Assembly: GCF_001194135.2 (NCBI RefSeq)
Contig: NC_068982.1
Coordinates: forward strand, 137,486,811 to 137,538,917
DNA length: 52,107 bases
Origin: Octopus bimaculoides
Taxonomy: Eukaryota
Direction of reading: 5' to 3'
Shown: one piece after another, positions 1,120-29,200 of the stretch
Position numbering within the stretch: the stretch's first letter is position 1
Layout of the letters: every line of letters starts with the position of its first letter
The notes under the pieces: model-generated
What the model was told of the DNA's origin: nothing
The model's input: only the letters and a program-made list of their open reading frames with translations
Database searches by the model: none
Program-made: the position numbers and the translations under genes

Positions 1120-1235
1120 AAGTTTTCTTTCAGTTTCTATCTACCAAATTCGCTCAATGCTTTCGTCTGCCCAAGGTACCACACTGTGGGACTGAACCGA
1201 GAACCATGTAGTTGGGAAACCTACTTCTTATCACA
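1120..1235 (-). mobile_element. SINE family C, partial head
   Basis: tttctttcagtttctatctaccaaattc...ccaaggtaccacactgtgggactgaacc matches the copies at 33111 and 26220. Confidence 0.65.
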
Positions 1236-1604: not shown

Positions 1605-1697
1605 TCGAAATTCTTAGTAACATTTCGTCCGTCTTTACGTTTTGAGTTCAAATTCCACCGTGGTTGACTTTGCCTTTCATCCCTTCCAGGATTGATG
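1605..1697 (+). mobile_element. SINE family B fragment
   Basis: gagttcaaattccaccgtggttgactttgcctttcatccc. Confidence 0.7.
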
Positions 1698-2463
1698 TGA
1701 TTAGTTTCCCCTTCCCCAAACTTATTGACCTTGAAATTTGAAATCTTCAGTTTATCCGTATTTAGACATACCTTCTATATTTTTTGTCCATATTAAAGAA
1801 GCGTATCCGATCCTCCTCTATTTCTGTTCATTTTAACCCCCGTATACAATATGCACCCATGCACCAAATACCTTCATGTACCATTCAGAAGTTTTTGTTC
1901 CAGCATTAAAGGACTTAGTCACTCGGTATCCGATTTACCTACAAGATTGCAAGGCTTAAACCAAGAGCTTCAATCTAGGGAGCTTCCAACCAAGGTGTGT
2001 GTGTATAATATAATTCTAATCGGGGGATACTGGGAGTCACCTCGCGAATGAAATACCATAGGATTTCTCTTCATCTCAACCTGGCGCTGACATCACTTCA
2101 AAACTCGTGTCACCAATTAATTCCGGTTAACAATGATGAAATATATTATTCACATGAAGTTTCGACTTTCAAACTTAAACATTCCATGTTCGAATTGAAC
2201 GGCCATCTTACATTTTGTGTCGGAAAGTAAATATCACATCATTTAGAATCTATTTACTTAGATACTAATGTTAAATATATTTAACGCTCCTAAGCTGCAA
2301 ATTTAGACTTTACATCCCAATACATATATTTGTTGGTTCTAAATACACAATCTATAGACATCAATTCTCATTAACTGAAATGTTTCGTTATTTCATTTTA
2401 AACGCCTAAATATTTACGTTTGAAAAGTTTTCTCGTTTTTTAACCTTTGTGTTTCTTAATAAG

Positions 2464-2572
2464 ATGTGCTGGTTGTACCCAACAACCTTACGCAAACAAG
2501 GTATGCCACATATCTTTGAGTCGACCACTTCTGGAACTTAGACCACTAGAGGATCTGCTGGAGACGTTATTG
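2464..2572 (+). CDS. SPRTN: SprT-domain exon: (x)CAGCTQQPYANKVCHISLSRPLLELRPLEDLLETLL
   Basis: Acceptor taataag|, donor TTG|gtaaat, phase 2 to 0. Aligns by eye with human SPRTN CAGICSYEGKGGMCSIRLSEPLLKLRPRKDLVETLL. Symbol denotes the family; this may be a paralog. Confidence 0.9.
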
Positions 2573-5500
2573 GTAAATATATCCGTGTTTATACTCATTA
2601 CTGCCAATGCTCTATCTCTTTAAAATATCAACGTAGTACTAATTGTAAAGTTAATTTCCAGTTTCATGTATTTGTCTCCTTATTCAGTGTTTCTTAGCCT
2701 TTCACAATGGCGAGAGGTAACCAAATTGGCCACCACGCTTCTTTAAATGTACCACATGTAAAATGGCCGCCCTCTACAGTATACACATTCCACACCACTG
2801 AATTTTCATAATATTCAATATATTTTTGTAATTTTTTTCTGGTTAAAGTTTGTAAAATGTCTCCTAAATTTCAGTTCTCGCTGTAATTGAAATTTTGCCA
2901 AACTCAATTTTAGTTTTAGCATAAACTTCCAAAAAAACGAGTGGGAATTAGACACTGTTAGACTAAAAGAAACTACCAAAATAAAGCTTCCTGTTGTCTC
3001 TCTTGGCCCTATATCGTCTTCTCTCCACTTGTAACTATACTGTGTGTGTGTGTGTGTGTGTGTGGCTTAGCGATTAAGGTATCCCGCTCACTATCGTAAG
3101 GTTACAGGTTGTATCCTTGAGCAAGACTTTCACATTGCTTATGTTCACTCAGCAGGCAAAAATGAGTTGTATCTGAAATTCAAAGGGGCCAGCCTTGTCA
3201 CATTCTGTTTTGCTGAATCTCTCTGAGAACTGTTAAGGGTTCACGTGTCTGTAGAGTGCTTTAGCCAGTTGCACATTAATTTCAGGCGCAGGCTGATCTA
3301 AAAGAACACTCGTTCTCGTAGCCGCCGGAATGCCCAGTCGGAGGCGCCTACACGCACTCCCACTCCTAAAGCCCTATTGCTCGATGTACCTTTCCCCTTG
3401 TACAATAATACATTTAATTTCTTAGAAAATTGTACCACTTTTAATTTGTTAATTTGGGTTTATAAATTAGAATTGAACAAATAATTTTAATGAAATATTT
3501 TAAATTTATTTTTCAGCACGAAATGATCCATGCTTATCTTTGGGTAACTGATAATCATGTAAGTAAAATAGAATATATCTGTTACTCTAGTTTTCTTGCG
3601 TAACGGCAAAGAATCATGTTTGACGTTTTTATTCTGATAAAATAAAACATGATTTTTGTTTCTTTTATATGGAGGACATTATCGATTTGAAAACAAAAAT
3701 GTGAGTTTCAAAACGGAAGCTGAATCTAAGCACTTATCGAAAAGAGCTCCTCTGAATCTTGGGGTCCGTAAGGATATTTAACCACTGTAATATTACGCGG
3801 ATCAACACCCGTAGAATATTGCACTAGCATTTTGCAGTTAAGTAATCCAGACTAGATTTCTGGGGTGCGTTTAATTGGCGGAAACTAGTATCTCACAATT
3901 TGTCCTAAAGTACCTACACTATTTTATATCAATACTACATTGTAACAGTGGGTCACCTTAAATTGTTTCGATAATTGGTCAGATATATCTGAGCTAATAG
4001 TTATTTCTAACCCCTGATAAAGGGCCATGTTATTTTTTGGTAGTAGGGCATGTTTGATAAAATCGACTCCAGTAATTGTCTGGCACTTTAAGCTCAACAA
4101 CATTCAAATTCAAATCGGAGCTGACTTATATTTCAACAATTCTGTAACGGTAAAATATTACCCAATGAAATTCGTTGTGACTGAAAGAAAAATACTATTT
4201 GATTTAAAGCATCTTCTGCATTTTTCTTTCAACTTATCAATTTTTATGGTTAACACCAAATTCCGAAGTTTCGAAATGGCGCAAAATTTCCAATTATCAG
4301 CTGAAAAATATAATTTTCCACGTTTCAATCTTCAAATAGTCGTGGGTTTAACTTTTAATGTATAACTCCTTCCCTCATTGGCACTTTACTTTTGCAATTA
4401 ACTTTCTAGAGATTTTTGTGCACGATGAAACGTTTTCTATAGAATTGAATTTCCAGTTATGATTTCACGGCTCTTCAGATGTCTGGGTCCAAGTGTAGGC
4501 CTGACATCATTGTCTGGACACAGGATTTGGATTAGTGATTTTCTTCTTTCTATCAGATTGTGATTGGATTTTAGATGACTTTGCCCTCAGTTATTGAGGT
4601 ACTTCAGTCACTGCACAACATGGTGATCCAGTGTAGTAACAGGTGGAGTATCATGAATACCCTAATACACTCGATATATCGGGTTCGCCTGGCTTTGCGC
4701 TGCGACCGCCTGGCTTTGCGTTCTGAGCGCAAATTCTGCTGAGGTCGACTTTGCCTTTCATCCTTTCGGGGTCGATAAATTAAGTACCAGTTGCATACTG
4801 GGGTCGATCTAATCGACTGGCTCGCTCCCACCAAATTTCGGGCCTTGTGCCTAGAGTAGAAAAGAATATATCGGGTAACCTCATAAAACCTAGGGCACTG
4901 TGTGTTGCACAGTCCGGCCACTTCGATCCCGAGTAGGAATAGAACCATCTATGAAACTAATCCATACAGCAAATGGATCTCGAAAGAAAATATGGAGGTG
5001 TGACATTATGGTTGTGTGATCGTTTGCTTCGTAAACCCTTGGTTTCGGGTTCAATCTCACTACACAGCACCTCAGGTGTTTTCCACAGCTGTAGGCTGAC
5101 AAATTCCTTCAGTGAATTTGGACGATAGAAATTACGTGTAAGATTGTACCTGCACAATTTCCCCGCTTCTTGGAAACCAGTTTTGGTTAATGTCCCCGTA
5201 ACAGAGGTTCACCAAAAAGAGATCAATGAAATAAGCAATTGAGTGGAGTTGTTAGACTAAACCTTTTAAGGCGGAACTCCAGCATGGCCGCAATCCAATT
5301 ACTGAAACGAGTAAAAGAATAAAATGCAGCTGTATACGGAAGTTAAACCTAAAGTCAGGAATGCGAAGTGTGGATGGATAGTTATTTAAATTTTATTTTA
5401 GACATGATGGTGGGATGGTGAAGTCTGTTGCAATTTATTAGAAACTATTCGCCTGTATTAAAATTAGAAAATAAAAAATTCGTTTTTTTAATTATTTCTT

Positions 5501-8500
5501 TGCAGGAGCAGCTAGAACATGGCCCGAAATTCCACGCGGAAATGAAAAGAATTGAGAAAGAGTCGGGAATGAAACTAGAGGTGATTATAACTAATTTATT
5601 GAATTTATGTAAATTTCTGGCAGTGTTTGTTATTTGGTGTAGAATGTAAGAAACCAGCGCCAAAGAAAATATAATTTAAAATAATCATAAGAAAAAAATT
5701 AACAATTTAGCGCTAGTTTGGAGCATTGCCCAAATATTTAATGTAAGTTATTTTTCAAACGTAGTCTTGTTTATAACAAAAGTGTATTGGTGAGCTTATG
5801 TCTGTCAGCTGCATTTTATAATGTAATACAGCAATCTTTCTTTTGACGCTGTTTATTGAAAATCGGACACGAGTACCTTGCGGCACTTGGGCAATGTGTG
5901 GCTTTTTATGACTTGTATGGAATTCAGTACCACTATGTGGAGGCGCAATGGCCCAGTGGTTAGGGCAGCGGACTCGCAGTCATAGGATCGCGGTTTCGAT
6001 TCCCAGACCGGGCGTTGTGAGTGTTTATTGAGCGAAAACACCTAAAGCTCCACGAGGCTCCGGCAGGGGATGGTGGCGAACCCTGCTGTACTCATTCACC
6101 ACAACTTTCTCTCACACTTACTTCCTGTTTCTGTTGTGCCTGTAATTCAAAGTGTCAGCCTTGTCACACTCTGTGTCACTCTGAATATCCGAGAACTACA
6201 TTAAGGGAACACGTGTCTGTGGAGTGCTCAGCCACTTGCACGTTAATTTCACGAGCAGGCTGTTTCGTTGATCGGATCAACTGGAACCCTCGACGGAGTG
6301 CCAACAACAACAGTATCACTATGTAAACATTACTTTCTAAACTGTAACAGATTATTTGTTTCGTTTTTCTTATCCAATCGTGCTTTCTTCTCAGTTTGAC
6401 GCCGTGCATTTTCTCTCCGAATTCTCAACGGAAACTTACTGTACACAATGTTCTTTAAATAATTTTACTGCTACAACCCGCTTTATGAATAAAATTTCAT
6501 AAAACTTAAAATGGTTGTCTATACTAGTAAATTATACATAGTAAATGATGTACATAGTAAAAATAGCTTTAAACTAACGAAATCGATTACGCGACATCTG
6601 TAATCGCCGAAAGCTTTACTACAAAGTGTAAGTATAAGGTGTTCTGTGTGAAGGTGCGTGGTTTAGTGGTTAGGGTGTTGCACTCACAATTGCTAGATCG
6701 TGAGTTCGATTCCAGGACGAGGGTGGCGCGCTGTGTTCTTGAGCAAAAACACTTCATTTCACGTTGCTTCAGTTCATTTGGTTGTAAATGGGGGATCCCT
6801 GCGATGGAATCTTCTGATGAGTGGAATGTTGGCTCGCTCACCTAACCTGCGAGACGGCATCGTTCGAAGGTTAAAACTATGCAAAGCGCATTGGGACCAA
6901 CAAACGATATCACGGTCAGTACCGTGATATTAAATTCTAACAATTGGCTATTAATGTTACTATATCTAAGAAAAATTCTTAAAAAATAATCTAGTGTCTT
7001 TTATTTCTACAAAATGAATCGAATTGTCTCGTAAATATTACTTAATGAAAGACAGCAAAACAATCCTTAAAATTTCTCTATCGAATTTAGAAACTCGTCC
7101 ATAAGACGTGAGTTGCACGGGAATCCTTCGACTCTTTTCTCTTTAAATGTGTTTTTCTACCCAATATTTACATAATATCCACAGCTTTTTGTACTTAAAA
7201 ATTTGCTTCTCCAGAAACAATTTTACTAGAAAACTACTGAAAAGTCTGCCAATGAATCATTAACCAAAGTCGGTTACATTTTAATCTCTCGCCTAAATAT
7301 CTTTTCTTCTAAAAGGTTTTCCATGAATTCTATTCTGAATATANNNNNNNNNNNNNNNNNNNNNNNNNNNNNNNNNNNNNNNNNNNNNNNNNNNNNNNNN
7401 NNNNNNNNNNNNNNNNNNNNNNNNNNNNNNNNNNNNNNNNNNNNNNNNNNNNNNNNNNNNNNNNNNNNNNNNNNNNNNNNNNNNNNNNNNNNNNNNNNNN
7501 NNNNNNNNNNNNNNNNNNNNNNNNNNNNNNNNNNNNNNNNNNNNNNNNNNNNNNNNNNNNNNNNNNNNNNNNNNNNNNNNNNNNNNNNNNNNNNNNNNNN
7601 NNNNNNNNNNNNNNNNNNNNNNNNNNNNNNNNNNNNNNNNNNNNNNNNNNNNNNNNNNNNNNNNNNNNNNNNNNNNNNNNNNNNNNNNNNNNNNNNNNNN
7701 NNNNNNNNNNNNNNNNNNNNNNNNNNNNNNNNNNNNNNNNNNNNNNNNNNNNNNNNNNNNNNNNNNNNNNNNNNNNNNNNNNNNNNNNNNNNNNNNNNNN
7801 NNNNNNNNNNNNNNNNNNNNNNNNNNNNNNNNNNNNNNNNNNNNNNNNNNNNNNNNNNNNNNNNNNNNNNNNNNNNNNNNNNNNNNNNNNNNNNNNNNNN
7901 NNNNNNNNNNNNNNNNNNNNNNNNNNGACTGCCCCACCCCCTTTAAAATTGCTGGCCTTGTGCCAAAATGTGATCATTACGTTGCGTTGAAATTCCATGT
8001 GAAAGATTTGTTGTAAGGCAAATACTTTTAATCTCATCGGTTTTGTGTTTCACTTAAATCAAAGTGGCTGTGTATTCCTGACACTTGTACTCTTAATAGT
8101 CATCAAGCAGAATCACATGATACAGGGCTCTTAACTGTATATTCTATCGCGTCAGTAAAAGTATTTCGATTTGCACAATATTTTCACAATTACATTATAT
8201 TTGCGCGTTATTAGGGCATCAAAAGAAGTGAGTGGGGGGGGGCACAAGTGGTAAATAGTTTACTGCACAAAAGAAATCACTTTAAACTTGCTAAAATAAC
8301 ATTCCAAGTAGTTTATATGATCGAAAATATAATTTTGTAGTGTTTCTGCTGTTATAATGAGGATTTGATCAGATTTTGCAATTAAAGTAGAAAAATGTGT
8401 AAGTACACAAAAGTAGACATTTTTCATCTTGCTTTGTTCCGTTTTGAAAAATAAGAATTTATTTTATGGTTTGTTTATATTTTGAATTACATGTATAATT

Positions 8501-11673: not shown

Positions 11674-14600
11674 TTGCTATTATGCAAGTGTCGTAATTCC
11701 AAAATGTTACTTTTTCACCATTCCATGGCAAGACCATTTTAATACACTGACAATTTCTGATATCTTGGCAGCCGGAGATACGATAGTTTGACCAAAAGAA
11801 CCGGCTATTGCAAGCAAGAATATTGAAAAAAATAAAACGCCAAATTTGGATATACCACAGTTTAACATTATAGCAACGATATATATACAGTTACCATGTT
11901 TCAAGAAATATGGCATTTAAATATGGAATATTGGAAATTTTTTTTCTGTAGAATTTAATCCAAGAATTGAAGGGGAACTAAGAGAATTTATTTCCAAAAC
12001 GTGGAAAATTCCCGAAGAAGGTATTTACAAATTTCTTTCTAAAATTGTTGAAAACTTGGTATTTAAAAAAAAAATATCAAATTCGTCAATGCTTTCGGGG
12101 TTTTATCATCAAAACGATGTTCTTGCTATAAGTATTGATCTTTATAGAAGTCACATTTGAGAATTGAGCCTTTTCCATGATTCTAAATTTATTCTACAAA
12201 TTGTTAAATATTCTTAGTCTAAATTTAATGAACCAATAAAGTGACCTATGTGGTCATTTGAGTTGCTAGAAATATCAGCCAGGTATCTCGAATGGTACTT
12301 TATCGTCTTTAAAAATAGCTAACATTGTTGGGTAATCAGATTAACTGTCCCGGTTGGAATGTCTTACCGATCTGTTCAGTCAGGGCGGATCCGGGGCTAA
12401 GCAACCGTACATAAAATCCGAGGTAGATATTGCACTATATGTTGTCCTTCCACCTATATGGTAGTATTGCGACATAGATCACTAGCGCTATGACTTCCTG
12501 AATGTTTGTACATGAGCTTGATATTTCAGATTTACAAAGTGGATACATGAATTCCAGTAGTTTCTACATTTGATAAATACCTTGAACAATTATCCTTCCT
12601 TTAAGCCGAAGTCGATTTCCTTCTTCGAAAAGCGGTGGATAATATCAACATTGACAGTTTTGGACAATGAAACAGTCGTTTGATCATACAAGCGAGCAAA
12701 GAAATTAACAAGAAACTAATGGATAAGTCTCATACCATAAAATGCGTTAGCATTAAATTAACCAAGTTTTTCATTAGAAGTTCCTTGAAATTTGCTTTTA
12801 GCTTTTGTCACTTGACTGCGGCCATGTTGGGGCACTGCCTTGAGTTTAGAACATAGTTGATCAGAATATCTGAAAAAGAACAAAAATTTTCACAGGCCAA
12901 TGGGGTCCAATTAGACTCTAATGACCATATTTTATAACACCCGTATGACTGGAAATTTTTAACTAAAAATTTGTATGTGCATACAGTAGGACCTCGGTTT
13001 TCGAACAACTCAGATCACGAATAAATCATGCTANNNNNNNNNNAAACGAACTAACGAACTAACTAACTAACTAACTTTGGTTGTAGAACAAACAACAAAT
13101 GTAAGGTTATCCAACTAATATATCAAATCTCGAACATTTAATCACATATAAAACAATGCTTTTTCTATACATAGAATTTTTTTATACGTGATAGACTGTA
13201 CTCTTTTTCTATATGCCTGTCTAAATGAAGTATTGTTTCATATTCTGTGATTTTTGTGCATCTGTATTCTATGTATAAGAAAAAGCATGATGTCTTTATA
13301 TGTGATTAAATGTTCGAGATGTGATATATTAGTTGGATGACCTTAAATTTGTTGTTTGTTCTCCAACCAAAGTTTGTTATACTCCTCATTTACTTGAGCA
13401 CTTCTCTTGCAGTCCTATTAACCCTCTTGTTCCTAATAAAAATCAATCACTATTATTATTGATATATATATATATATATACATATAAAAGCACAATTTAT
13501 TCGCGATCGTGGTACTATTGTACATAAACTATTAAGTCATGAGATTTAAATAAGAATCGTAAAAGTTGCATAACTTTTAAAATCTGCTGGATCCCTAAGG
13601 GATCCCGCCGGCCCACGAAGGGTTAAGTATATGTATGTTAGGCACTCACCATATTCATTAAGTTACTCTAAGAAAGTGCTAAAACCTTTCCAAATCCTAT
13701 GCTTCGATTTGGTTTCAAAAACAGAATCAAGACAGCTTAAATTTCTTTATTTCAAACATTTGTAATTCAAACGCAAATTTAATTTATTTACCCCCATTGT
13801 ATTTATCCCATTTGAGCTTTCGGAATTGACAAATATTTGATTGTAATAAATGAAACTAGAAAAGTTAAACCTTTACAAACTGGAAATTTTCGAAGATAAA
13901 ACAGCCATCTAATTAATTTTGTGCAAATTGTTTGAAAATTGTTTCCATTTCCCAGGTCTTTACTAATCAGATCCAACAACAAGGAGGATTATCTTGCTTT
14001 CTTTAGATCGATTATCAAATTTGATAAGCAACTATAAAAAGAAATTTAGACAATACTTAATATATTCTACCAAGCTTATTTCTTACAGCAAGCGGATATA
14101 TTTAATATGAAATACAACCATGAATTGTTTCCGTTTTAAATCTTAGGATTAGTCTTTCATTTACTTGAATTCTGGGTTACTGATGTGGAAAAAATCAGAA
14201 CATCTTAGCATTCTTTCTTTCCAAGAAAGAATTCTTAATTCTAGCTGTTCGAAGGCTGAGAATGTAAATTAATCTGTATTTGTCTATGAATACTGTCAGA
14301 TCTAAATATAAATGTGTACAACAATGTAAAATTACTTCCCGAACTAAAATGGGTCAAGGATTCTGTTTTGTAAAATATTTAGTAGACTGGATGGATTTTC
14401 AGGCAGCTTATTTCTATGTGAAGTATAAAAATCGATCGGATAATTTCGTCTGTGATAAAATAAAACCCTGCTCTTTTTTACCTTCTTAGATTTCTAAGAT
14501 TGGACATCCTTTATACTTAAACAATTTTTTGTATTAGACTTTCTCGGTCTTTTCAACGTAACACTAAAATAGAAATGCAATTCAGAAAGTTTAGTAGTTT

Positions 14601-16855
14601 TGCTTGGACTTCAAAACTAGAATCGCCGCAGTTTTGAAAGAAAACCCAATCTAATTATGGTTCAGTTATTAGTGGAAACCAGTTTACTCGATTTATGTTA
14701 CAAATGTTCATTGAGAAAGTGGTAATGTTGTAGCTTTGTTTCCTCGATGACTTTATTTTATAACCCGTTTTTTTTTTTTGGTGGGGGCGTTAGATTTGTA
14801 TAACATCATAAAAAGTATCTTCGGACAGAGTTCAAAAGTTAAACAAGCAGAGAATGGTTTCCAGGTGAGACGAAATCTGAGCAGATGATCCCTGTGTCTA
14901 TTAAATGTTAGTCTATTAAATGTTAACTCGGTAATCTAGATATGAAGTGTTATCACTGAGGAGTAACCACTTTTGAAGAGGATTTCATCTATACTCAATA
15001 AAATGTAAAAAAAANNNNNNNNNNAACTATACCAATCGAATACACTTCAAAGAATATTTTAAGTTTCCTTTAAACAGAGTTGTATGGTTACCAAATTTTC
15101 TTTGCGACCACGTAGTTCCGAGTTTACACTGGACAAGTTTCTCCGATAAAATTGAATTCAGTAAGCGAGTTCACCATTTTTGTAAATTTTCATAAGACTT
15201 GCTTACTAAGATATCCCATCTTTTAAAGAATTATGGGTGTTGTAAAGTGTAGCTGCCACAAATGATAGACTGGGGTCGACATTTGCTAAGCCAACCCACA
15301 AATTGACTGTTTTAGGCCTCAGTCTGTTAGCTTCATGTCTGGAGAATATAATATTCGATTGTCTAAATCCATTCGGTGTACTGAAACCATTAATGCTACA
15401 TTACCAGATCTGTTCTTCATAAGCATAGAACATTCTGGTCAGAGCCTTAAATTTTGCAAGATGGAACGAGACTTTTCTAGCTGTAAGTTTAAGAGGGTCC
15501 TTCGGATACATATGACCCCACTTGACTTTCTGGCGCTCAGAATTATGCACCAGTTGAGCTTCCTACAGGACCTAACTCTTGTTTGAAAAACATTTTAGGA
15601 AGTATAAAAATTTCATTAGCAATTCAAGTTTCATGTATAACGGTAACGCAGCGGTATCTTTTAGTACATTAAAGGTTAAATCTAATATTCGAGCGACTTA
15701 GAGGTAAGTAAGCCATCGGGAGGATGGTATGGCTCCATCTTGGAACAGTAGGTGAAGCACGGTCTGTAAAAGACGTTACATAATGGAATATTAAATACAC
15801 TGGGTACATAATGGAATATTAGATACACTGGTAGGAAGTGGATGGTCTGAGATGGAATTCCTATGATCACAGAATTGCTTGAACATAGCTGACCTGAAGC
15901 TAAACAACGCCAAAGATAAATAGCGAACCATTTTTGATTCCCAATTGTTGGCATTTAATTCTTGCTAAAGATGTTTAGAAATCTTCACAGGAGCTCTTTA
16001 TTTCATAAATCTAGTCTCGTTGATCTTAATCACCAATTACAAAATGGAATTGAATTCGGATTTGAGTTTGTGTGCATTATATTAAAACTTTCAAACACAA
16101 ACTCTAGCTCTAAATGTACAAACATGAATTTCTTACAACGACGACTTTTCAAATTGTTTCTTGAAGCTGCTGTCAATATAACTTCTAAACTCTTGTACCA
16201 CACCCTATTAGTTTTTTTTAATTTATTTTATTTCATTTTTTTTTTTTCCTTTTTTGCGGACAATGACCAGATTTCAATAATTTACTTTTAAACATTCTCT
16301 TAAAGCTATGAAAAAACCCGCGTCACCTCCAGGAAGTGATTTCTCAAGCGATAATTCTGACCTGACTCTCAGTCCTTCATGGGGTAGCAATTTCGATTTT
16401 TTTGGCAGTTCAGGTTAGTAAGAACGAAATATCTTTCTCTCGCCTTTTTCTTTTCTTTCTTTCGTTTTCTCTCTCCCTCTCACATCGTTCAGCCATTTGA
16501 TTGCGGCCATGTTGGAGCACCGCCTTAAAGGGTTTTAATCGAAGTAATCAACCCCAGGACTTGTTTTATAGGTCTCTTTTGCCGAACCGCTATGTTACGG
16601 GGATATATATATACAAACATTGGTTGTCAAGCGATGATGGGTGAGGGAACATAGATGCATGTATATATATTATACGACAAGCTCCTATTTTCCGTCTACC
16701 AAATCCACTCAAGGCTATGGTCGGCCCGAGGCTAAAGTAGAAGACACTTGCCCAAAGTGCCATGCATTCGGAATGAACCCAGAACCATGTGGTTGAGAAG
16801 CAAACTTCTAAACTCTCTTTCTCTCTCTTTCTCTCTCTTTCTCTCTCTTTCTCTC

Positions 16856-18015: not shown

Positions 18016-21000
18016 TTGTGCTTTCAAAAAAAAAACAACCTGAGATGCGTTTCTGCAAAATCTCCATTTGTATTGATTTACCATTATGACCGGCTTAACC
18101 ATTCTTTCTCAGAACTGCTTCCTTTTAACTTGCAATAATTCGAATCCTTTTTAATTTGCAAACCTCCCGCCCTAATCTATGGAAGGCAGTTTTACTAAGG
18201 TCAAACGTTGACTACTAAGTCTGTAGCAAGATTTCGGTTTTTAACTTCTATATGTTATGCACAAAATGGAGCAAGTTCCTATGACCCTACAATACCCAAC
18301 CGTAGCTAATAGCTAAGTTCCTTTTGTTATGAACAAAAGGATATCCAACGCTTCATTCACGCTTGTGAATTTTCTCGGTCAATGCTTGTCTTTATTCTAA
18401 GCCAGAGTATTTTGTTGAAAACGATTTCAATATTTATGTATTTAGGAAAAAAATCCACTTATTGTAATCACATTCGTTCGGACTTACATCATTAAAGAAT
18501 TTCTACTTGACTTCAAATCTGCCAGATATTTATACTTTCTCAAATGAAGGAAAAATTAGTCTACAGACATGACCATTTTACAAATTCCCTTTGTGAACAC
18601 GTAGTTTTCAGTTCAATCTCAGTGCGCGCCACATTGTGCAAGTTCCTTCTACTCTGAACAAATTCAATAAGCGAGTTCACTATTTTCTTCTCTTTTCATG
18701 ACTCCATTTCTGAAATCTTCAATTACTTTTAATGGTTAGATCTGTGAAGAGCTACTGCAAATGGTCATCTGGAGCTAGATTTCGACATATGATAAACCGG
18801 CCCACCTTAAGTTTAAGACCTCTATATCTGTTGCAGAGAGTATTATCGCACTATCTAATCGTCTAAGAAATATGTTCAGTTTCAACATTTCATGAATATT
18901 TCAATAAATGTCGACATTTTTTTGTTTCAGATTTTTCTACTGATGAAGAACCAGGTGAGCTTAGCTACCCAAAACTTAATCCAGGAGACATAGTATATAT
19001 TCAAGTCTAGTAAACCCTAAATTCTGTTTTGATTTTTCAGTTTAACCTAAATCTTAAAAGTTGTTGAATGATTAAAGATAGTTTTGTCGACACGTGTTGG
19101 AAGAGAGACGGCCGATTAGCAGTCATTAGAGATTGTTTTGCGATAGTCATTTCGTCTCTCGACGCTCTTGGTTCAAATCCCACTGAAGCCAACTTTGCTT
19201 TTCATACTTTCGGAGGTGATAATGTACAAGTCATTTCGACATTCTCTTATTCTTTGTTCTCTCTGATTTCTGGTAAAAAATCGGCTGTCGTCAGACCTGG
19301 GGAGATATGAGCTCCTCCATGTCTAAAAATGTTATATCATGACAAGGATCTTATGATTCCATCAAAGAATTGAGGATTCAAGCCAAAGTAAGGCAATATT
19401 GACACATTTATCTTGCAGTTCGAAAATCTTCAATTCTAGGTTTTCTGTACAAATCTATTTTACCAAATGGACCATTTCGAACGTATTTATTGATTTGAGC
19501 CCAGTCCAAATCTGCTTTTCACATTACATCGCTGTAAGATAATGTAACAAATTGGATTCACCATCAACTTTGAGTTGTCGTTTTATCAAATAAATGTAAC
19601 GTTTTCTTTTGAGATTGTAAAAAATATTTCAAAAACCGGGTTGATAGTTGACTGTTAGGATTTGATCACTAGTTGAAGCAGACTGACAAATTTCAATTTA
19701 TGATTGAACATTACCAACTTGTTAGAATAAACTTATCGCTAGAATTATGAAATAACTTCGTTCAGATTATGTAGATGACTTGCATTTAATTTCATTTGCT
19801 TTAAAGAATTTGTAATCAATGTTTTAATGTTTGACTTTCTAAACTAGATAAATTTGCATCCAATGAAAAAACCAAAATGAAAGTACCAAAGGCCGGTTAG
19901 TATAACTGATATTTTTATTTTTAACATTTCGCATTTCTTGACTGATTTGAAATCGTCGACAGTTTGACGCAACATTTTAAACAATTTAGTAATTTCTGCG
20001 TCGGAATAATCAGCTATCTAATAAGGCGAAAATAGATAATCAAAACCAAAAGTTTTGAAACAGGCAAAATAACAAATATTTTTTCACAAACGTTTAATGA
20101 CCAATACAAACTAGTTGCTATTCCATGCATGGCAACTCTATAATTGAAGAGTATTTTTAGTCAGTAAATTTAATGGTACTTCTTGAATTGAATTTCCGAC
20201 GAATTTAAATTAAAATGGATGAGTTGAACTCTGGATGTAGTAAATGTATGGTTTAATTTTGATTTTTCATTGCAAATTTACTTATGTCGTTGGTGGCGAT
20301 CGACAGACGTCAACGCAAATATATCCCTGTAACCTTTACCTCAAGACTTTTAATTTGAAAAATTAACTTGTCTCTTAATAGTTTTAACTTTCATTTAAAC
20401 TAAAATCGTTACACTTCCAGCTAAATCAGTTACACCACTGATGGAAAATAAAAGTGAGTAAAGTTCAATTATTTCAAAAAACTAATATTTGGGGATAAAA
20501 TGAGCTGTTCATCAAAAAAAGTTCTGGTTTTTCATTTTTCATAATTAACATTCAATTTTCTAGCTAGAACCGCTTTAACTAGAGCTACATCACTTACTCT
20601 TCCAACAAAAGTTAAACATGACTAAAAATTTAATTAGAATTAAAGCAATTAAGTTCATGTAGGGATGAAATTCCTTTCACTAAAATCTCTCACTCGAGCA
20701 CAAACTCTTTCAATTTTGAACAAGAACAGTAAAGACTTATCATTTGAGACTAATATTTTAGGTTGAGTAAAACTAAATTGTGCATTTTAGTTGTTGCTTG
20801 GTCTCTTTGTTCAGAATTTAATTTTAAATCACAGCTCCAGTTAAATCAGTAACCCCACTAAAGGAAAATCGATGTAAGTATAGATCTTACGGTTAATTAT
20901 TCGTGAATAAGATGTTCAATCTAGCTTCTCGCTTGCTTTCTGATCTTCGTAATTTTTTCTTGCTAAAACCGTTTTAACTTTAACAGCACTTACACAACCA

Positions 21001-24000
21001 ACAACGAGAGTAAAAATTAAATTCTAATTAAAACTATAATTATCATTGAAATTCCTTTCAATAAACTCCGTCACTCAAGCTCAAATTCTTTCACCATTGA
21101 ACAAGAAAAGTAAACTGATTTAAACCTAATATTAATGGATGAGTACAGATAAAATGTCGATTTTAGTTGCTTGGTCTCTTTGTTCAGAATTTAATTTTGA
21201 ATTCATTTTAGCACCAAAAACCACAGCTCGTGTTAAACCAGTAACCCTACCAAAGGAAAATAGATGTAAGTATAGATCTTACGGTTAATTATTCGTGAAT
21301 AAATTCAATCTAGCTTGTGGCTTGCTTTCTGATCTTCGTAATTTTTTCTAGTTAAAACCGTTTTAACTCCAGCTACGGCACTTCCATCACCAACAAGAAA
21401 AGATAAACGAGAGTAAATATTAAATTCTAGTTAAAACTATAATTGTCAAGTAGATGAAATACCTTTCAATAAAATCCCTATCCACCATTGAACAAGTAAA
21501 CTTTTTCTCATTTAAGACTAATATTAATGGAGGAGTACAGCTAAAATGTCGATTTTTACTTGTTGCTTGGTCTCTTTGTTCAGGATTTAATTAAAATTTT
21601 TTTTTATCTCCAAAACCTCAGCTCAGGGTAAATCAGTAACCCCACCAAAAGAAAATCGATGTAAGTATAGATCTTACGGTTAATTATTCTGATCTTCGTA
21701 ATTTTTTCCAGTTAAAACCGTTTTAACTCGAGCTACAACACTTACACCACCACCACCACCACAAGATAAACCAGAGTAAAAATTAAATTCTAATTAAAAC
21801 TATAATTGTCATAGAAATTCCTTGCACTAAAATCTCTCACTCGAGCACAAACTCTTTCAACATTGAACAAGAGAAGTAAAGACTTAGCATTTAAAACTAT
21901 TTTAGGTTGAGTACAGCTGAAATGTGCATTTTAGTTGTTGCTTGATCTCTTTCTTCAGAATTTAATTTTTAATTCTTTTTAGCTCCAAAAACCTCAAGTC
22001 CAGTAAGATTATCAAAGGAAAATCGATGTAAGTATAGATCTTACGGTTAATTATTCGTGAATAAGATGTTCAATTTAGCTTGTCGCTTGCTTTCTGATTT
22101 TCGTAATTTTTTTCCAGCTAAAACTGCTCCAACACAAGATCTATTACTAACACCACCTCCGACAGAAAATAAGTGATTAAAAAATTTAATTTCGATTAAC
22201 ACTGAGACATATACGGATGAAATCTAGATTTTTACAAGACTGCTTGACATGTAAAGTTAAAAGGAGGGCTTGCGAAGATATAAGAGAACAGCTGGTCTTC
22301 ATCAAGACCCAGCAAGTAGAGAGAAAAAAATGCAGATTAGCGCTGTAGAACTTTAGATTTAGCTTGCCTTCTGTTCGTAACGTGTTCACTTCGCTTCATA
22401 TCTTTCTTGAAGTACAAACAATCGATGTCCAATCTTATCTCAAATTCTTCAATGGTATAATAGATTGAAAAATATAATTTGCAATACTTTCTTTTTTAGC
22501 TTCTAAAATCTGTCATTCAAGTTCAAACCCTTTCACCCTTGAACAATCGTAATGACGTTTCATTTAAAACAAATGTATGTGGAGTACAGCATGAAACGTT
22601 GAGCAAAAAAAAAAAACGGTGGCGTTTGTTGATATTCCTTAACAAATCACTTCGTAACTTTGTGCGTTCGAGAAGGGGTGGAATGAAGTAACAATATCTC
22701 TTAACAAGAAAGATATCGATATAAAACAATGCTTTGATATGTATTCGTCCAATCCATGTCAGCATAGAAAAACGGACGTGAAATGAAGGCTTTGGACGAT
22801 ACTTAATTTCTATTTAGCGGCTCAAACTCTTTTGCTATCAGCGAACAAGAAAAGTAAATAACGTTGATTTAAATAAAGCTAATATTCGTGAACTACAGGA
22901 TAACAGAAGGGAGATGACGTTTCGATTTTAAGTAGTATAGTCTTTTTATTCATAATTCAATTTTAAATCCGTTTTTAGCTACTAAAGTGACCGCGACCCG
23001 AACTAAATCAGTACCACCACCACCGACTAAAAATAAAAGTAAAAATCAATTTTTAATTCAATAAAACTAAGAGCATTGTAGAGTTATAAGTCGTACGGTT
23101 CGCTTTTTATTTCCTCTTCACATTACCATCGGTAAACAAAAAAGTGAAAGTCAATTTTCAACGAAATCAATTGGAAGAAGAACGTTGTTGAAATTAACTC
23201 TTTTCATAACTTTTTAATAACTTAGTCACTTATAGTTTATACTTATAAAGATATATAAAGTCATGATATACTTGTCAATCTTGCTTTCTAAAGATCTTGG
23301 ATGCTGAAACACAACTGAGTGGATCTCGTGGAACAGTTAGTTTCCAGATCGTATCGTACTAACACTTTATCCGGACTAGAAATATTCTCAAATTTCACTA
23401 AACAGATGATCGCTTTGGGAGGAAGCTTGCCATATATCAGGAGCTGGTGCAGCAGTGCAGAAACCAAGGCTGGCAGGCAGGTTGCGAGGCAATAGTGGTG
23501 GGCTGTCGAGGGTTTTGTATGGCATTCATTCTGCAAAGGTCTGACTGGGTTTGTTATTGGTGCAACAAAGAGGGCTATAAATTTCATTATTAAAGCTGCA
23601 AAGATGGCCTCTTGGGGACTTTGAGTAAAGAAGGGCAGACTAGTGATTTGCTGCTACAGGGATGCAAACTGATGAAGTTCCAGTTTGAAGACCCAAACTT
23701 GATCAACCCGGGGTGAGTTAACTGGGCGAAGTGAATATTATGTTGAAAGACCCTACCTCCACTTCCCTTTGAAACACGAGAAACATCACAGATGATGCAT
23801 TCCAAAGCATCTGCGAGACATCTTAAAACTAACATACGAAAATATAAGCGTCGCGATAATACGAGTCGCTTTCTATATACCTTCAATGTTTGCGTCGTTC
23901 AAATGAATATTTTCAATCAAATGACATTTTTATTTATTTAGCAAAGAAATTACCTGAAAGTTCTAAAAATTCAGCGGCGTAGGAAAAAGATAAATGAAGT

Positions 24001-26164
24001 TCCAACAACTATAAATAATGAATAGTTTGAGTAAATTAGTTTACAACCTGATTTAGCTTCTTCTGAACTTATTCATTTGAGTTCCATTAGACTAAAGAAC
24101 GTGAGGACTTCACAAGTTTGTCGTTCTATTGGTAAAGGATTTATCCGTAAGAAAGTGTTAAAAGCGACAAATAAACTGAAAATCGTTACTGTGAGGTTCT
24201 TCAGTGAAATTGTTTCTCCAAATTTATTCAACCTGTATAGTACAGATATTCTGAATTTAACTTAAATGAGGTTTATGTCAAGAACTAATGAACGATAAGA
24301 TAACAGGTATTTCAAGACTAGAGCAACTACTGATGTACATTTAGTATTCTAAGAAACTGATTAAAATTACCTCAATGCAATGGCTAACTCTAGTTTTAAA
24401 AATAGCAAGGGAAAATGCCAAATTTTAGAGATATGGTATTGCAGTATGTAGTCGTTAACAACTAAGAACGTATGTCAAGGCAACTGCAATCTTTTTCACA
24501 TGCCAAATCAAAAGTACTTTCACCTACTCTCAAAAATGTTGAGTAAATATCTCCTTTTGGAAAAAGCTACTTAATTCTAAAGCTTGTTTCCAATTCTAGT
24601 CGTCTACACTTTTGACAATGTTTAAACGTATCTCATTGGTATCATAGATAGTCCATTTTTACAAATTATGATATGCAGTTATTTCTGAACTGCTTCTCTA
24701 AAGATAAACGTCTCGATGGCGTAATCTTGTTTCCCAAAAATCTTAGATACGTTTAAAGTTTAACGGAATAACATTTTTTTAAAATTTTGTTTTAAGCTAA
24801 GAAAACTGAAGCACCAGCTAAGGTTTCATCAGTGAAGAGAAAACGTGAATAATTTTACAAAATCAAATGTTATGACCTTTCGATTTTAACGAATATGCAG
24901 CTAGTTTTCTATTCCACTTAACAAAAACACAAAATCTCGCAACAGATTTTTTCCCTTAATTACCTTCTTTAATGAATTTTAAAAAAGGTTAAAAGCAACA
25001 ATCACAGGGAAGGATGTATTTTATATATTCAGTCTAGGTTAACTTTCCTAACATTCTGGTCAAACATTGATTTCAAATTCTGGCACAAGACTAGCAATTT
25101 CGGGGAAGTCGATTACGTCGACCTAATGTTCACCTGGTACTCAACGATCCCAAAAGAACGAAAGGCAAAGTCGATCCCGTATGTTAGCTGTACGATGTCT
25201 CGCAGATGCTTTGGAATGCATCATCAGTGATGTTTCTCGTGTTTCAAAGGGAAGTGGAGATAGGGTCTTTCAACATGATATTCACTTCGCCCAGTTGACA
25301 CACCCTAGGTTGATCAAGAGCATAAAAACTCGACGAAATGCTCAGTATTTCATTGGTGTGTTAACGATTCTGCCCGCTCGCGGCCTAATTGTCAAATTAT
25401 CGAAAATATAAATAGTACAGATGTTGCAGTGGCACTAACTAAAATGAAAATTCTATTTGAACAATTTTTTTTTTCAATAATGTGAAATGTTTGAAGATAC
25501 AGCTTATCCATCGTTTTATGGCGCATACAATCTCGATAACGTAAAATATTCTTGCATGTCTTAACGTTGTACATTATGACAATCATCACTCATAGAAGTA
25601 AAATCGCAAATTAACTCTTAAATTTTCCTAATGCAAACATTTTCTATCTCTGAAATTTGAAATACAACAGAAATCCACCTGCATTTTGATGTCTGAACTT
25701 GAAAATGAGATCCAAGCCGTTTCAGTCTTTCTAAATGAAGTTCTCTCGTTGTTATGCAGGATTACTGTTAAAGAAATGTTATTGTAACAGTAACTAAAAT
25801 GAATATTTTTTCCAACAAAAATAATTTTCGCACGTTTCAAACACTCTTCATCAATGATTTTTGTTCATTTTCATTGTATGTCAAACCTACACGAGTGGTG
25901 ATTCATTCCAGAACATTAAATCTTTGTTCTGAGAGCATGTGCTAAGGTACTAAAGAAAAGTTCCGACTGCGCCTGAGGTGCGATGGCTAATACGGTTCCG
26001 GATACACTTACGGACGCAACATCTGACGAGGCTGTTTCCCCACTGCATCTACGGTTGTAGTGGTTAGTTATGCGATTACGATGTCATACCGGCTGTGACA
26101 GCATAATTGAAATTGAGATTCTTCTGTTCTCCAGTCATACATCACTCATGATCTCGTATACAGG

Positions 26165-26222
<58 letters not shown>

Positions 26223-29200
26223 ATTTGACTGTGGCCATACTGGGGCACCGCCTTGACTTATAGTCGAACAAATCGTCCCGGGACTTTTGAAAGCTTCGTA
26301 CTTATTTTATCGATCTTTTTGCCGAACCACTAACTTACGAGGACTTAAACGCACCAATACCGGTTATCAAGCGGTGGTGGACACACGGATACACACACAC
26401 GACAGGCTTTCAATTTCCGTCCACCAAATCTACTCACAAGGCTTTGGTCGACCAGAGACTATAGTCAACACTTGCCCAATATACCACGCAATGGGAATGG
26501 ACATGAAACCATGTGGTTGGGAAGCAAGCTTATCACACAGCCATATGTAAATATACTGCAGAAAGAGTAGAGCTGAGGCTCCCTACACAAAGTAAGTTTT
26601 GCCCTCTTTTTGAAAATGCAATAGTTTGCGTACTCTATAATTTTATTCCTTGATGTTGGACAACTTCAAAATTTTAAACCATCAAATTAAGCATAGCAAT
26701 TTCCCCCTTTTTTTTTCCTACTCACAGCCCTACTTAGGAGTGCTTATCCCACTGCTATGAGAAATACTACAGGAGAGTAAGACCTCATTGAGCAGTATTT
26801 CCTTCAATTTTTTTGCTAAGCGTGGGCTAATTTTCTCTTTACAAAGTATGTGCGCTTCCTTGTTAGCAACCATCTTCAATTAAGAATGTTCGATCGCAAC
26901 TTAAGCTTCGTGTGTGCACATTTCCTTTGCTCTCTAATTATTAAGGTAGTCCATTGCTGTTGACTTTCAACCCATCTAGTCTTAAGCTTGGTTTCGATTT
27001 CTTGTACCTTTAATATGTAGAAACGTAGTGCATCGATTCCTATGTTGATTCCCGTCACCTCCCTTCGTTTCGCGAATCAATAACAAATCCTTATTAAGTT
27101 CTCTCCTACCCTTGAATGTCTCCCTTCGATTCAATTGAAAATAAATATCCCGTTCCACCTGTATTGATCATAGTGTATTGATTATATTGGTTTTATCTTC
27201 TAAAGATTATAGATACCTATAATATTAGTAATTTTAATTTTTAGCCGCTGAATCTTCTTCAAAGACTGCAACAATGAAGAAAAAGAGTAAGTAAAGATCG
27301 ATTTCCTACAAAATCAGATTTAACGTGTCTGAAACCTACTTTTCTGTTCATCGCGTTATTTGAGTCTTATTGGTCAGTTTGTTACTAGGCCGTCAGCAAA
27401 TTCATACGCAGACTCTCAGCCCCTTGACCACCCCTTCTGTTCATATTTCTCACTGGATTTGATTTTAAGTTTCGAACTAACTGTTACTCATAAACAAGTA
27501 TGGCTTAGTAAGATGTTTCACGTTTTTGCTAATTCTTTGAACTGTCTGTTATTGCGAGCAGACATGGGCACCCATTCGATTCTTCTGTACTGACTCTTAA
27601 ATATCAATAACTAGAGCTCTTTTGACCAAAATCTCCTCTTCCTGCAAATGACTGTCCGATTTATTGAAATGTCGAGACAATACTTGTTCTTCCTGAATAA
27701 ATCCTTACATCTAAAGATGAAGTGCAATGATATTCAAATCTTGTCTCTTAAAGATTATAACTGCTGATGTAGTTACATTTGTCTCCAAACAAGAAATAAA
27801 TTTTACGCTACTAAAAATACTGAAAGTCCATCTAAAACAAACAAAAAGAAATATGAGTCGAGATCAATTTGCAGCCAATTTTTCCCCATTAATAATGGAT
27901 TTAAAGCAACAACATCACAAGGTGGGTTATGTTCTATATTGTCTTGTCACTTTGCTTCTCACTTTATCGATATTCTATATAGAACGATTACTGTTCTGAA
28001 GCTACCAAAAATAGAAGGGGTAAAGAAGACTGACCGTCTGAGGCGACACTTTATGCAGGGTAACACTTGTACGTCTACAGTGTAAACCCGTATAGGGTTC
28101 GGGGCTTATCTGTGGCGGCAATCTCAAGGCCTATCCGTGCAGGATTCTTACTACGCTACTAGTTGCAAAGGAAATAGTGATAAGTATCCCAAAGTGAGAA
28201 ACTGCTTTTCCTTACAATCGAAATTTTATTTCTAGATGCTATTTAGGTGATTATTTCTAGATACTGTTTAGATGATTATTTCTAGATACTCAATGTTAGA
28301 TATTTTTGATTTTACCTAAGAATATTTTTCTTTCCAGAATTACTAACAAATGGGAAGACGAAAATGGCTTCTAAATTCACTGAGAGTAATGTTTTTTTTT
28401 TTAATATATATTTAATTTATATTTAGTGGAGTAAGCATAGCAAGCTCTGTATAATCAATTAGAAGCTGGTCTTTTGTTCAATCACAAGTTTTTCTACGAC
28501 ATAAGGTGGGTAGACAAATCGGCAATTGTTTGTGATGGTTTTAGAGACTCTGCACTAATCTTTATGATTCGTTCTATGTTGAAATCCCGCAGAAGTCATT
28601 CCTTCAAGGTTGATAAAATACCCGTCAAGTACTGAGATCGATATAAAGTAGTTAACCCACTCGTCCCACAAATTTCAGATCTCCGGCCTAAAATATCATG
28701 GCAGAACTCAGAGTATCTGTAAAAATTAATTACAGTATACGACCCCATATGTTTTGCGCTCAAACTCTCACCGAAGTAGAGTTTATCGTTTTGAAGCCGA
28801 TAGTACTTATCTAAGACAGGCTACGAACCGCTCTGACACGGCCATCTTGGTCCACTCATTTGGCGTCACTGATTCGACGCTGCCTTATTTGGCATGTATT
28901 GTCACTGGGACATTTTGGCACCGTAAAAACTTACTGCTCTAGTTAACAACTAACTTGTAATCACTTCTAAATTTTCAGCTTCCGGCTCCACATTGTGTAT
29001 GTGATGGCTGGTGAAATAGTAATGAAATGTGGAAAACAGTTTTCTTACAATGGGTTTCTGTAGATCTTTGACAAAGTAGAACCGAGTTAATTTAAATTTC
29101 AACGCTGTGAGCAGAAAAATTAAGGAGAAACAAGATGTATTAGATAACGCCTATTACCACAAACACTTCTCCATCTTTCCTCTTTGTATTTCTGTATGTA

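What the first reader, a model, noticed from the sequence alone, without database searches (positions are those of the whole stretch)
2464..5580. Hidden divergent Spartan (SPRTN)-family protease with an intact catalytic motif
Seen: three small exons with canonical splice sites and compatible phases give CAGCTQQPYANKVCHISLSRPLLELRPLEDLLETLL-HEMIHAYLWVTDNH-EQLEHGPKFHAEMKRIEKESGMKLE. Known: SPRTN is the DNA-protein crosslink protease; HExxH plus the His of the HGPxF motif bind the catalytic zinc, and all are retained here. Inference: the loop after CAG (CTQQPYANK versus ICSYEGKGG) is more diverged than expected for the usually conserved ortholog, so this may be a lineage-specific paralog.
Basis: partly seen in the sequence, partly recalled or inferred. 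Interest (0 to 1): 0.75.

Follow-up and report, generated by a model that had tools for sequence, protein, structure and literature searches.

The report
Fast-evolving octopus Spartan protease gene
The three small exons are real and belong to an Octopus bimaculoides gene for a Spartan-type DNA-repair protease that NCBI has already annotated, but the gene is an unusually fast-evolving octopus form that lacks the usual ubiquitin/PCNA-binding tail and has a long disordered tail ending in a second DNA-binding zinc module.

Summary
Observation confirmed. Exons 2464-2572, 3517-3558 and 5506-5580 have AG/GT sites and compatible phases. They splice to a 75-aa peptide that hits Pfam SprT-like at 67 bits, with HEMIH and the HGPxF histidine intact.

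The gene is not truly hidden. The window is Octopus bimaculoides, and RefSeq XP_014770613.1 ("Spartan") already contains these exons; only the older UniProt model omits them.

The RefSeq model is itself flawed. The next exon (7316-) runs into an assembly gap that must hold the first zinc-binding subdomain (ZBD1), which is present in the Octopus vulgaris and Argonauta orthologues. The true N-terminal exon is not in the window.

The full gene appears to be protease, then ZBD1, then an acidic-plus-basic disordered region built from many phase-1 micro-exons, then a second ZBD (29735-29892) and a conserved stop. There is no SHP, PIP or UBZ.

The protease core is only 45-50% identical to other SPRTNs, which share about 73% with each other. 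The neighbouring ankyrin-SOCS gene is 92% identical between Octopus and Argonauta.

Whether octopus also keeps a canonical SPRTN (paralogue versus sole orthologue) could not be tested. I lean slightly towards paralogue.

The parts
1876..1925 (+). First coding exon of the RefSeq model (MYHSEVFVPALKDLVT + CG). Doubtful: it replaces the canonical SprT N-terminus.
   Evidence: Exact match to XP_014770613.1 residues 1-17. The O. vulgaris and Argonauta orthologues instead have ...LLxQLFxIYxxxYF...V.WSxRMTS before CAGC. No homologue of that exon lies in 1-2463.
2464..2572 (+).
   Evidence: 81% identical to O. vulgaris and 64% to Argonauta.
3517..3558 (+).
5506..5580 (+).
7316..7343 (+). Start of exon D (VFHEFYSEY, equivalent to human VYHTFHDEV), cut off by the assembly gap.
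   Evidence: Acceptor tcttctaaaAG| in phase 0. In Argonauta the same exon is 211 nt and also encodes ZBD1 (L002 15168-15378).
7344..7926 (.). Run of 583 N. Inferred to hide about 183 nt of exon D encoding ZBD1.
   Evidence: O. vulgaris residues 132-200 and the Argonauta ZBD1 have no counterpart elsewhere in the window. This is inference, not shown.
11952..12020 (+). Exon E5: (K/E)FNPRIEGELREFISKTWKIPEE, phase 1-1. Modelled as a helix in the O. vulgaris orthologue.
   Evidence: AlphaFold2 helix 204-225, with block-mean pLDDT 75-89 over residues 201-230.
16306..16413 (+). Exon E6: (A)MKKPASPPGSDFSSDNSDLTLSPSWGSNFDFFGSS, an acidic Ser/Asp-rich segment. Its ATG at 16308 is the start of the UniProt model.
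18931..20453 (+). Three phase 1-1 micro-exons: 18931-18954, 19848-19895 and 20421-20453.
20826..22124 (+). Tandem repeat of 392-bp period. It carries the K(S/T)VTPxKENR micro-exons 21212-21265, 21622-21660 and 21983-22027, plus an intact unused copy at 20841-20873.
22118..28385 (+). Further tail micro-exons. 27245-27286 is in the RefSeq model. 22979-23038, 24797-24844 and 28338-28385 are intact homologues of O. vulgaris exons that RefSeq does not use. 22118-22174 (donor GA) and 23942-23995 (in-frame TAG, donor GA) are dead copies.
29735..29895 (+). Last coding exon: second SPRTN-type zinc-binding subdomain (ZBD2), IKKYKWQCYGACQNEAPMFGRIERLINRPPNTSEKWFLLHEKNCGGSFVRFD, then TAA.
   Evidence: Pfam SPRTN_ZBD PF22934 at 67-70 bits against a cut-off of 27. 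All 12 invariant ZBD columns are kept. AlphaFold2 pLDDT 85.8, superposing on 6mdx/6mdw at 1.5-1.6 A. 89-92% identical to O. vulgaris, with the stop in the same place.

Best explanation
The three exons are the catalytic core of a real, intact Octopus bimaculoides gene of the SPRTN (Spartan) family. It belongs to a fast-evolving lineage shared with Octopus vulgaris and Argonauta hians.

The inferred full protein has these parts in order:
- an SprT N-terminus (its exon lies outside the window);
- the metalloprotease subdomain (exons A-D);
- ZBD1 (in the assembly gap);
- a short helix;
- an acidic Ser/Asp patch;
- a long Lys/Thr/Pro-rich basic disordered region built from many phase-1 micro-exons;
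- a second ZBD at the very C-terminus.

It has no SHP box, PIP box or UBZ.

Proposed mechanism (inferred): a DNA-activated zinc protease. HExxH plus the HGPxF histidine hold the catalytic zinc. The ZBDs bind unpaired DNA bases, and the basic tail binds duplex DNA in the manner of the SPRTN basic region. The enzyme would therefore be brought to and switched on at DNA by its own DNA-binding modules, rather than by ubiquitin, PCNA or p97.

I judge it somewhat more likely to be a specialised paralogue than the sole orthologue, but this is unresolved.
For: Shown:
- Exon structure and splice phases.
- SprT-like at 67 bits and SPRTN_ZBD at 67-70 bits; human SPRTN 6mdx at E 9.5e-32.
- Catalytic H/E/H/H and Y117 conserved.
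- Identity with RefSeq XP_014770613.1.
- The O. vulgaris orthologue CAI9718184.1 has protease, ZBD1, disordered region and ZBD2, and ends at the same point.
- The Argonauta locus has the same gene order, and exon D and ZBD1 form one 211-nt exon there.
- The tail exons are all phase 1-1, so their gain, loss or skipping keeps the frame.
- ZBD2 keeps 12 of 12 invariant ZBD columns and models onto the human ZBD at 1.5 A.
- No UBZ-like motif on the + strand of the window, nor in the three octopod proteins.
- Protease core 45-50% identical to others, against about 73% among canonical SPRTNs.
- The neighbouring ankyrin-SOCS gene is 92.5% identical between Octopus and Argonauta, against 59-66% for the protease core.
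- Octopus and Argonauta group in 200 of 200 bootstraps on a long branch. They share an RP(L/F)ED signature found in only 4 of 260 sequences.

Background on the roles of the ZBD, basic region and UBZ comes from PMC9240642.
Against: - No transcript data were examined. The chain of micro-exons rests on three gene predictions in two species.
- ZBD1 and the N-terminal exon are inferred for O. bimaculoides, not seen.
- Argonauta has no ZBD2 in its locus, so the two-ZBD form may be limited to Octopus.
- No biochemical evidence exists for any octopod member.
- The basic region directly after ZBD1 is not obviously basic (KVKEPSEKKFEF).
- Orthologue versus paralogue is untested.
Confidence: 0.7

Rival explanations
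1. One reading: a lineage-specific paralogue that coexists with a canonical, UBZ-bearing SPRTN elsewhere in the octopus genome. It may be specialised for the germline, like the young Spartan duplicates of Drosophila.
For: - The protease core evolves far faster than in any other animal SPRTN sampled, including fast lineages such as nematodes and flatworms at 63-68%.
- All C-terminal partner-binding motifs are lost.
- An unnamed relative, P0005, from another sample shares the RPLED signature and also lacks a UBZ, which suggests a distinct subfamily.
- There is precedent for recurrent Spartan duplication with rapid divergence in Drosophila (PMC11210505).
- O. sinensis has a SprT-like gene whose qPCR primers match neither this locus nor the O. 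vulgaris protein (PMC11202624). That gene may simply be GCNA.
Against: No canonical cephalopod SPRTN was seen among the named hits, although eight other molluscs gave one. The octopus genome could not be searched.
Confidence: 0.5
2. It is the only SPRTN orthologue of octopods. It has been remodelled (UBZ, PIP and SHP lost; disordered region and ZBD2 gained) and is evolving quickly.
For: - RefSeq and the Argonauta submitters both name it Spartan.
- Only this type was recovered from three cephalopods.
- The locus is syntenic across Octopus and Argonauta, so it is old and stable.
Against: A sole copy of a normally highly conserved gene dropping to 45-50% core identity, while the neighbouring gene stays at 92%, is unusual. 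Absence of a canonical copy was not demonstrated.
Confidence: 0.4
3. There are two separate genes, wrongly fused by prediction pipelines: a protease gene ending after ZBD1/E5, and an independent gene for the disordered region and ZBD2 starting at ATG 16308, as in UniProt A0A0L8IF26.
For: The UniProt model starts at that ATG. ZBD2 is only 38% identical to ZBD1 and is absent from Argonauta.
Against: - Gnomon in O. bimaculoides and the O. vulgaris annotation both join E5 to E6 in frame.
- E6 has an acceptor and enters in phase 1, matching E5's exit phase.
- The UniProt start is explained by the assembly gap breaking the upstream reading frame.
Confidence: 0.12
4. A decaying pseudogene copy.
For: The RefSeq model lacks the N-terminus and ZBD1. 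A stop lies 4 nt before a strong donor. Two tail exons are dead.
Against: - The missing parts are explained by the gap and the window edge.
- All coding exons are open, with canonical splice sites and intact catalytic and zinc ligands.
- The stop position is conserved in O. vulgaris, and ZBD2 is 89-92% identical.
Confidence: 0.03

Closest known systems
Canonical metazoan SPRTN / Spartan / DVC-1 (human Q9H040; structures 6MDW and 6MDX)
   Same: SprT metalloprotease subdomain with HExxH, the third histidine and Y117. A SPRTN-type ZBD with the C-x3-C...H-x3-C ligands, R185 and W197.
   Different: - No SHP, PIP or UBZ.
- No N-terminal VDxxWExxDPxPD motif.
- RPLED in place of RPRKD.
- The acidic linker residues D157 and E161, implicated in autoinhibition (bioRxiv 10.64898/2026.06.16.732584), are S/A and H/S.
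- A long tail of micro-exons.
- A second ZBD at the C-terminus in Octopus.
- Core identity of 45-50%, against about 73% among canonical members.
Young Spartan-family duplicates of Drosophila (mh, Gcna and CG2694 daughters; PMC11210505)
   Same: SprT-domain genes that evolve quickly and differ in architecture between close species.
   Different: Duplication is documented there by synteny. Here, duplication is unproven. No expression data were examined for this locus.
GCNA / ACRC
   Same: SprT protease combined with a long, rapidly evolving disordered region.
   Different: In GCNA the disordered region is N-terminal and the C-terminus carries a different zinc finger and an HMG box (PMC11210505, Fig. 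1 legend). Here the disordered region is C-terminal, both zinc modules are SPRTN_ZBD, and every hit among the best 150 that I named was SPRTN-type.
Wss1 / WLM proteases
   Same: DNA-dependent zinc protease with HExxH.
   Different: Pfam WLM scores 15.3 bits, below its cut-off of 26. Wss1 lacks a ZBD (PMC9240642).

Membership tests
SPRTN (Spartan) family | SprT-like metalloprotease domain above the Pfam threshold | tested here: met
   PF10263 at 67.1 bits against a cut-off of 25.6. Human SPRTN 6mdx at E 9.5e-32.
SPRTN (Spartan) family | Catalytic HExxH plus a downstream zinc-ligand histidine (human H111, E112, H115, H130) and Y117 | tested here: met
   All conserved in the alignment.
SPRTN (Spartan) family | SPRTN-type zinc-binding subdomain directly after the protease subdomain | tested here: inconclusive
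   In the window, the exon that should carry it runs into the N gap 7344-7926. It is present in the O. vulgaris and Argonauta orthologues. A second copy, ZBD2 at 29735-29892, passes PF22934 at 67-70 bits.
SPRTN (Spartan) family | N-terminal part of the SprT domain (human residues 45-75) | tested here: inconclusive
   Not found in window 1-2463. Present in the orthologues, where it lies 1.2 kb upstream of exon A in Argonauta. The RefSeq first exon is unrelated sequence.
SPRTN (Spartan) family | C-terminal partner motifs: SHP box, PIP box and UBZ4 zinc finger | tested here: not met
   No UBZ4 finger is encoded downstream of the protease exons: the one + strand match to the pattern C-x2-C...H-x3-C (6153-6227, in an intron) has no UBZ-like sequence. 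The octopod proteins have no UBZ or PIP match. SHP was not scanned by motif; the proteins simply end right after ZBD2 at a conserved stop, leaving no canonical tail.
SPRTN (Spartan) family | One-to-one orthology with SPRTN of other animals | not testable with these tools
   No octopus genome or proteome could be searched by homology. The protein tools returned only partial, mostly unnamed lists.
GCNA / ACRC | N-terminal disordered region, then SprT, then a C-terminal zinc finger and HMG box | tested here: not met
   The disordered region is C-terminal to the protease. Only SprT-like and SPRTN_ZBD are found by Pfam.
Wss1 / WLM | WLM domain above the Pfam threshold | tested here: not met
   PF08325 at 15.3 bits against a cut-off of 26.

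The most novel reading that the evidence does not exclude
Octopods may have no canonical SPRTN at all. In that case the essential crosslink protease has been rewired in this lineage: the ubiquitin, PCNA and p97 guidance modules are replaced by a modular basic tail of micro-exons and, in Octopus, a second ssDNA-binding ZBD. It would also evolve several-fold faster than its neighbour gene, hinting at an arms race with something on DNA, as proposed for satellites in Drosophila.
Probability: 0.35. Interest if true: 0.6.

Novelty: new variant of a known kind. Interest (0 to 1): 0.4.

Why it matters
SPRTN is normally one of the more conserved DNA-repair enzymes, and its control by ubiquitin, PCNA and p97 is central to current models. 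A natural version that keeps the protease and ZBD, drops all three guidance motifs and adds a second ZBD would be a useful comparison. It would help separate DNA-driven from ubiquitin-driven activation. It would also extend beyond Drosophila the observation that Spartan-family genes can evolve very quickly.

Practically, the case shows that both public gene models for this locus are wrong in different ways because of one assembly gap.

Tried and rejected
- The search for homologous proteins with the 75-aa peptide found nothing, because of the word index. The 137-aa composite found only the UniProt ZBD model.
- The look-up of encoding contigs had no record for the ankyrin ORF, P0001 or P0003.
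- Motif scans for an N-terminal exon, a PIP box or a UBZ in the window found nothing credible.
- I tried to find a canonical cephalopod SPRTN in two ways: a profile of lophotrochozoan SPRTNs (only proteins under 350 aa were listed, none cephalopod), and naming the ten hits most like mollusc SPRTN (gastropods, brachiopod, nemertean and others, no cephalopod). This is inconclusive, not negative.
- The organism of the closest non-octopod relative, P0005 (run ERR4592246), could not be identified.
- The O. sinensis 'SprT-like' qPCR primers do not match this locus.
- AlphaFold2 of the full O. vulgaris protein left ZBD2 unmodelled for lack of alignment cover, so ZBD2 was modelled separately.
- The pseudogene reading was rejected (see the rival explanations).
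- The Rfam mir-16 hit in an intron is a near-perfect hairpin and lacks the mir-15/16 seed as I recall it (AGCAGC; from memory, not checked).


Full report
**1.

- 2464-2572. The first base completes a split codon; the frame runs from 2465.
- 3517-3558.
- 5506-5580.

Each is flanked by AG and GT, and the two internal junctions are phase 0. Each sits in a short open frame closed by stops on both sides.

The spliced 75 residues score 67.1 bits (E 1.4e-18) on Pfam SprT-like, whose cut-off is 25.6. The catalytic HEMIH, the histidine of HGPKF and the tyrosine equivalent to human Y117 are all present.

**2.

A tblastn with human SPRTN, written from memory and used only as a lead, found a zinc-binding-subdomain exon 24 kb downstream, at about 29.7 kb. 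The protease core I recalled is identical to database protein P0086.

A motif scan found a further exon at 7316. It begins VFHEFYSEY, matching human VYHTFHDEV, and runs straight into a 583-N assembly gap.

With the ZBD exon added, phmmer against PDB gives human SPRTN 6mdx at E 9.5e-32.

**3. The gene is not hidden**

The composite peptide retrieved UniProt A0A0L8IF26 from Octopus bimaculoides, a 183-aa "Spartan-like zinc binding domain-containing protein".

Mapping it on the window gives 15 coding exons:
- 1876-1925
- 7316-7343
- 11952-12020
- 16306-16413
- 18931-18954
- 19848-19895
- 20421-20453
- 21212-21265
- 21622-21660
- 21983-22027
- 27245-27286
- 29735-29892, followed by TAA

**4. Both public models are damaged by the assembly**

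An HMMER search of 1.84 billion representatives gave 990 relatives. The closest is Octopus vulgaris CAI9718184.1, 487 aa. Reading along that protein:
- It has a normal SprT N-terminus (...LLLHQLFTIYDEKYFYCKLTGNVRISWSKRMTS-CAGC...).
- After IFHEFHSEC it has a complete first ZBD (HHLQTHVWKCNGPC...ICGGTFVKVKEP).
- It then continues into FNPRIEEEL..., a disordered tail and a second ZBD.
- It ends ...CGGSFVRLD, the same point as FVRFD-stop in the window.

Neither the N-terminal 55 residues nor ZBD1 has any counterpart in the window.

The Argonauta hians locus (L002) settles the anatomy. There the VYHxF segment and ZBD1 form one exon of 211 nt, entering in phase 0 and leaving in phase 1. The first exon lies 1.2 kb upstream of the CAGC exon.

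It follows that the window's exon at 7316 has lost about 183 nt, all of ZBD1, in the gap. The RefSeq model jumps the gap only because the 28-nt stub happens to end in phase 1. Its MYHSEV... first exon is probably a filler. The UniProt model starts at the first ATG after the gap (16308).

That O. bimaculoides has ZBD1 is an inference from two relatives. It was not seen.

**5. Architecture**

Pfam finds only SprT-like and SPRTN_ZBD.

Exons E5 to E13 are all phase 1-1. The assembled stub of exon D ends in phase 1, and the full exon is expected to as well, as in Argonauta. Exon E14 enters in phase 1. Gain, loss or skipping of any tail exon therefore keeps the frame.

Several tail exons lie in a 392-bp tandem repeat at 20826-22124.

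The window also holds further homologues of O. vulgaris tail exons that RefSeq does not use. Four are intact, and two are dead through a GA donor or an in-frame TAG.

The tail has two parts:
- an acidic Ser/Asp patch, pI about 4;
- a Lys/Thr/Ser/Pro-rich basic stretch, pI above 10.

AlphaFold2 of the O. vulgaris protein models the protease, ZBD1 and a helix encoded by E5 with confidence, and leaves the tail disordered. Its best PDB match is human SPRTN, E 8e-17.

ZBD2 is well supported as a real ZBD:
- It keeps all 12 invariant ZBD columns.
- Modelled alone, it reaches pLDDT 85.8.
- It superposes on the human ZBD at 1.5-1.6 A.
- It is the best-conserved part between the two Octopus species, at 89-92% against 79% for the protease core.

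Among the first 154 family members fetched, the only one with two ZBDs in a single model is the O. vulgaris protein. Argonauta has none in its locus.

There is no credible UBZ or PIP motif on the + strand of the window, nor in the octopod proteins.

**6. How divergent is it**

- The protease core is 45-50% identical (median) to all non-octopod SPRTNs. Canonical SPRTNs share about 73% with one another, and the canonical proteins closest to the bivalve Sinanodonta reach 86-92%.
- Both ZBDs are similarly divergent.
- Octopus and Argonauta group in 200 of 200 bootstraps on a long branch. They sit next to one unnamed protein, P0005 from run ERR4592246.
- These four sequences alone carry RP(L/F)ED where 164 of 260 sequences have RPRKD.
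- They also lack the N-terminal VDxxWExxDP motif and have WF for WW197-198.
- The neighbouring ankyrin-SOCS gene is syntenic and 92.5% identical between Octopus and Argonauta, against 59-66% for the protease core. The acceleration is therefore specific to this gene.

**7. How it probably works**

The catalytic machinery and ZBD ligands are intact. The simplest reading is a DNA-dependent zinc protease of the SPRTN type.

In human SPRTN the parts have known roles (PMC9240642):
- The ZBD binds unpaired bases.
- The basic region binds duplex DNA.
- The C-terminal SHP, PIP and UBZ motifs recruit the enzyme.

Here those motifs are absent. They are replaced by a basic disordered tail and, in Octopus, a second ZBD. 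I infer that recruitment and activation happen through DNA alone.

The acidic linker residues reported to mediate autoinhibition in human SPRTN, D157 and E161 (bioRxiv 10.64898/2026.06.16.732584), are S/A and H/S in octopods. Control of activity may therefore also differ.

All of this section is inference.

**8. Paralogue or orthologue**

Canonical SPRTNs turned up in Lottia, Patella, Haliotis, Elysia, Lymnaea, Biomphalaria, Pomacea and Sinanodonta. None came from a cephalopod. The lists were partial and mostly unnamed, and no octopus genome could be searched.

The gene-specific rate jump, the loss of all partner motifs and the existence of P0005 lean towards a specialised paralogue. There is precedent in Drosophila (PMC11210505). 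The absence of any canonical cephalopod hit leans the other way. I put the odds near 50:40.

The literature search found no paper on SPRTN in cephalopods.

**9. Verdict**

The "hidden" claim is only half true, because RefSeq already has the gene.

The gene is a variant architecture of a known family, and both public models of it are broken by one assembly gap.

Interest is moderate. It would be higher if this proves to be the only SPRTN of octopods.

Noticed in passing
window 38950-40731 (- strand): Single-exon 593-aa ORF with about ten ankyrin repeats and a C-terminal SOCS box (ASB-like). It is syntenic and 92.5% identical to a gene in the Argonauta hians locus (L002 34176-35924).
   Followed up: partly
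window 11265-11358 (+), in the intron between exon D and E5: Near-perfect 94-nt hairpin (-38.1 kcal/mol, z = -8.8). It gives a borderline Rfam mir-16 hit (39 bits against a gathering score of 36.5) but lacks the mir-15/16 seed as I recall it (AGCAGC; from memory, not checked). It could be a novel miRNA precursor or a palindromic repeat.
   Followed up: partly
window 16700-18150: Long purine/pyrimidine-skewed low-complexity tract (GA/TC-rich; GC skew -0.5), interrupted by a 483-N gap, just downstream of exon E6. It creates spurious long ORFs of the RERERK... and SLSLSL... types.
   Followed up: no
window 4690-4835, 9719-9835, 954-1052, 44678-44743, 1633-1686: Copies (81-90% identical) of a short interspersed repeat, in both orientations, inside introns and flanks.
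   Followed up: no
window 29893-32000: The stop codon lies 4 nt before a strong donor (cg|GTAAGT). No AATAAA or ATTAAA occurs within 1.6 kb downstream, and no AATAAA within 2.1 kb. A 54-N gap starts at 29966. The 3' end of the mRNA is therefore unclear and may involve a spliced 3' UTR.
   Followed up: partly
window 35491-36078 (-) and 36729-37073 (+): Two ORFs in opposite orientation share a near-identical peptide (...LQLDALPNANHSESVV...HRHE.QSGGTGNGHAQNGVFYVPPAQEPVQ...). This suggests an inverted pair of a repeated element around a 347-N gap.
   Followed up: no
protein P0005 (Logan assembly of run ERR4592246): Unnamed 347-aa SprT plus ZBD protein with the octopod-type RPLED signature, no UBZ and an acidic Ser/Asp tail. 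It is the sister of the octopod clade in 181 of 200 bootstraps. The organism is unknown.
   Followed up: partly
L002 1-5970 (Argonauta hians): The upstream neighbour of the Argonauta SPRTN-like gene is a 315-aa product with a weak SNAP (PF14938) hit. It could serve for synteny tests once the octopus region upstream of the window is available.
   Followed up: no
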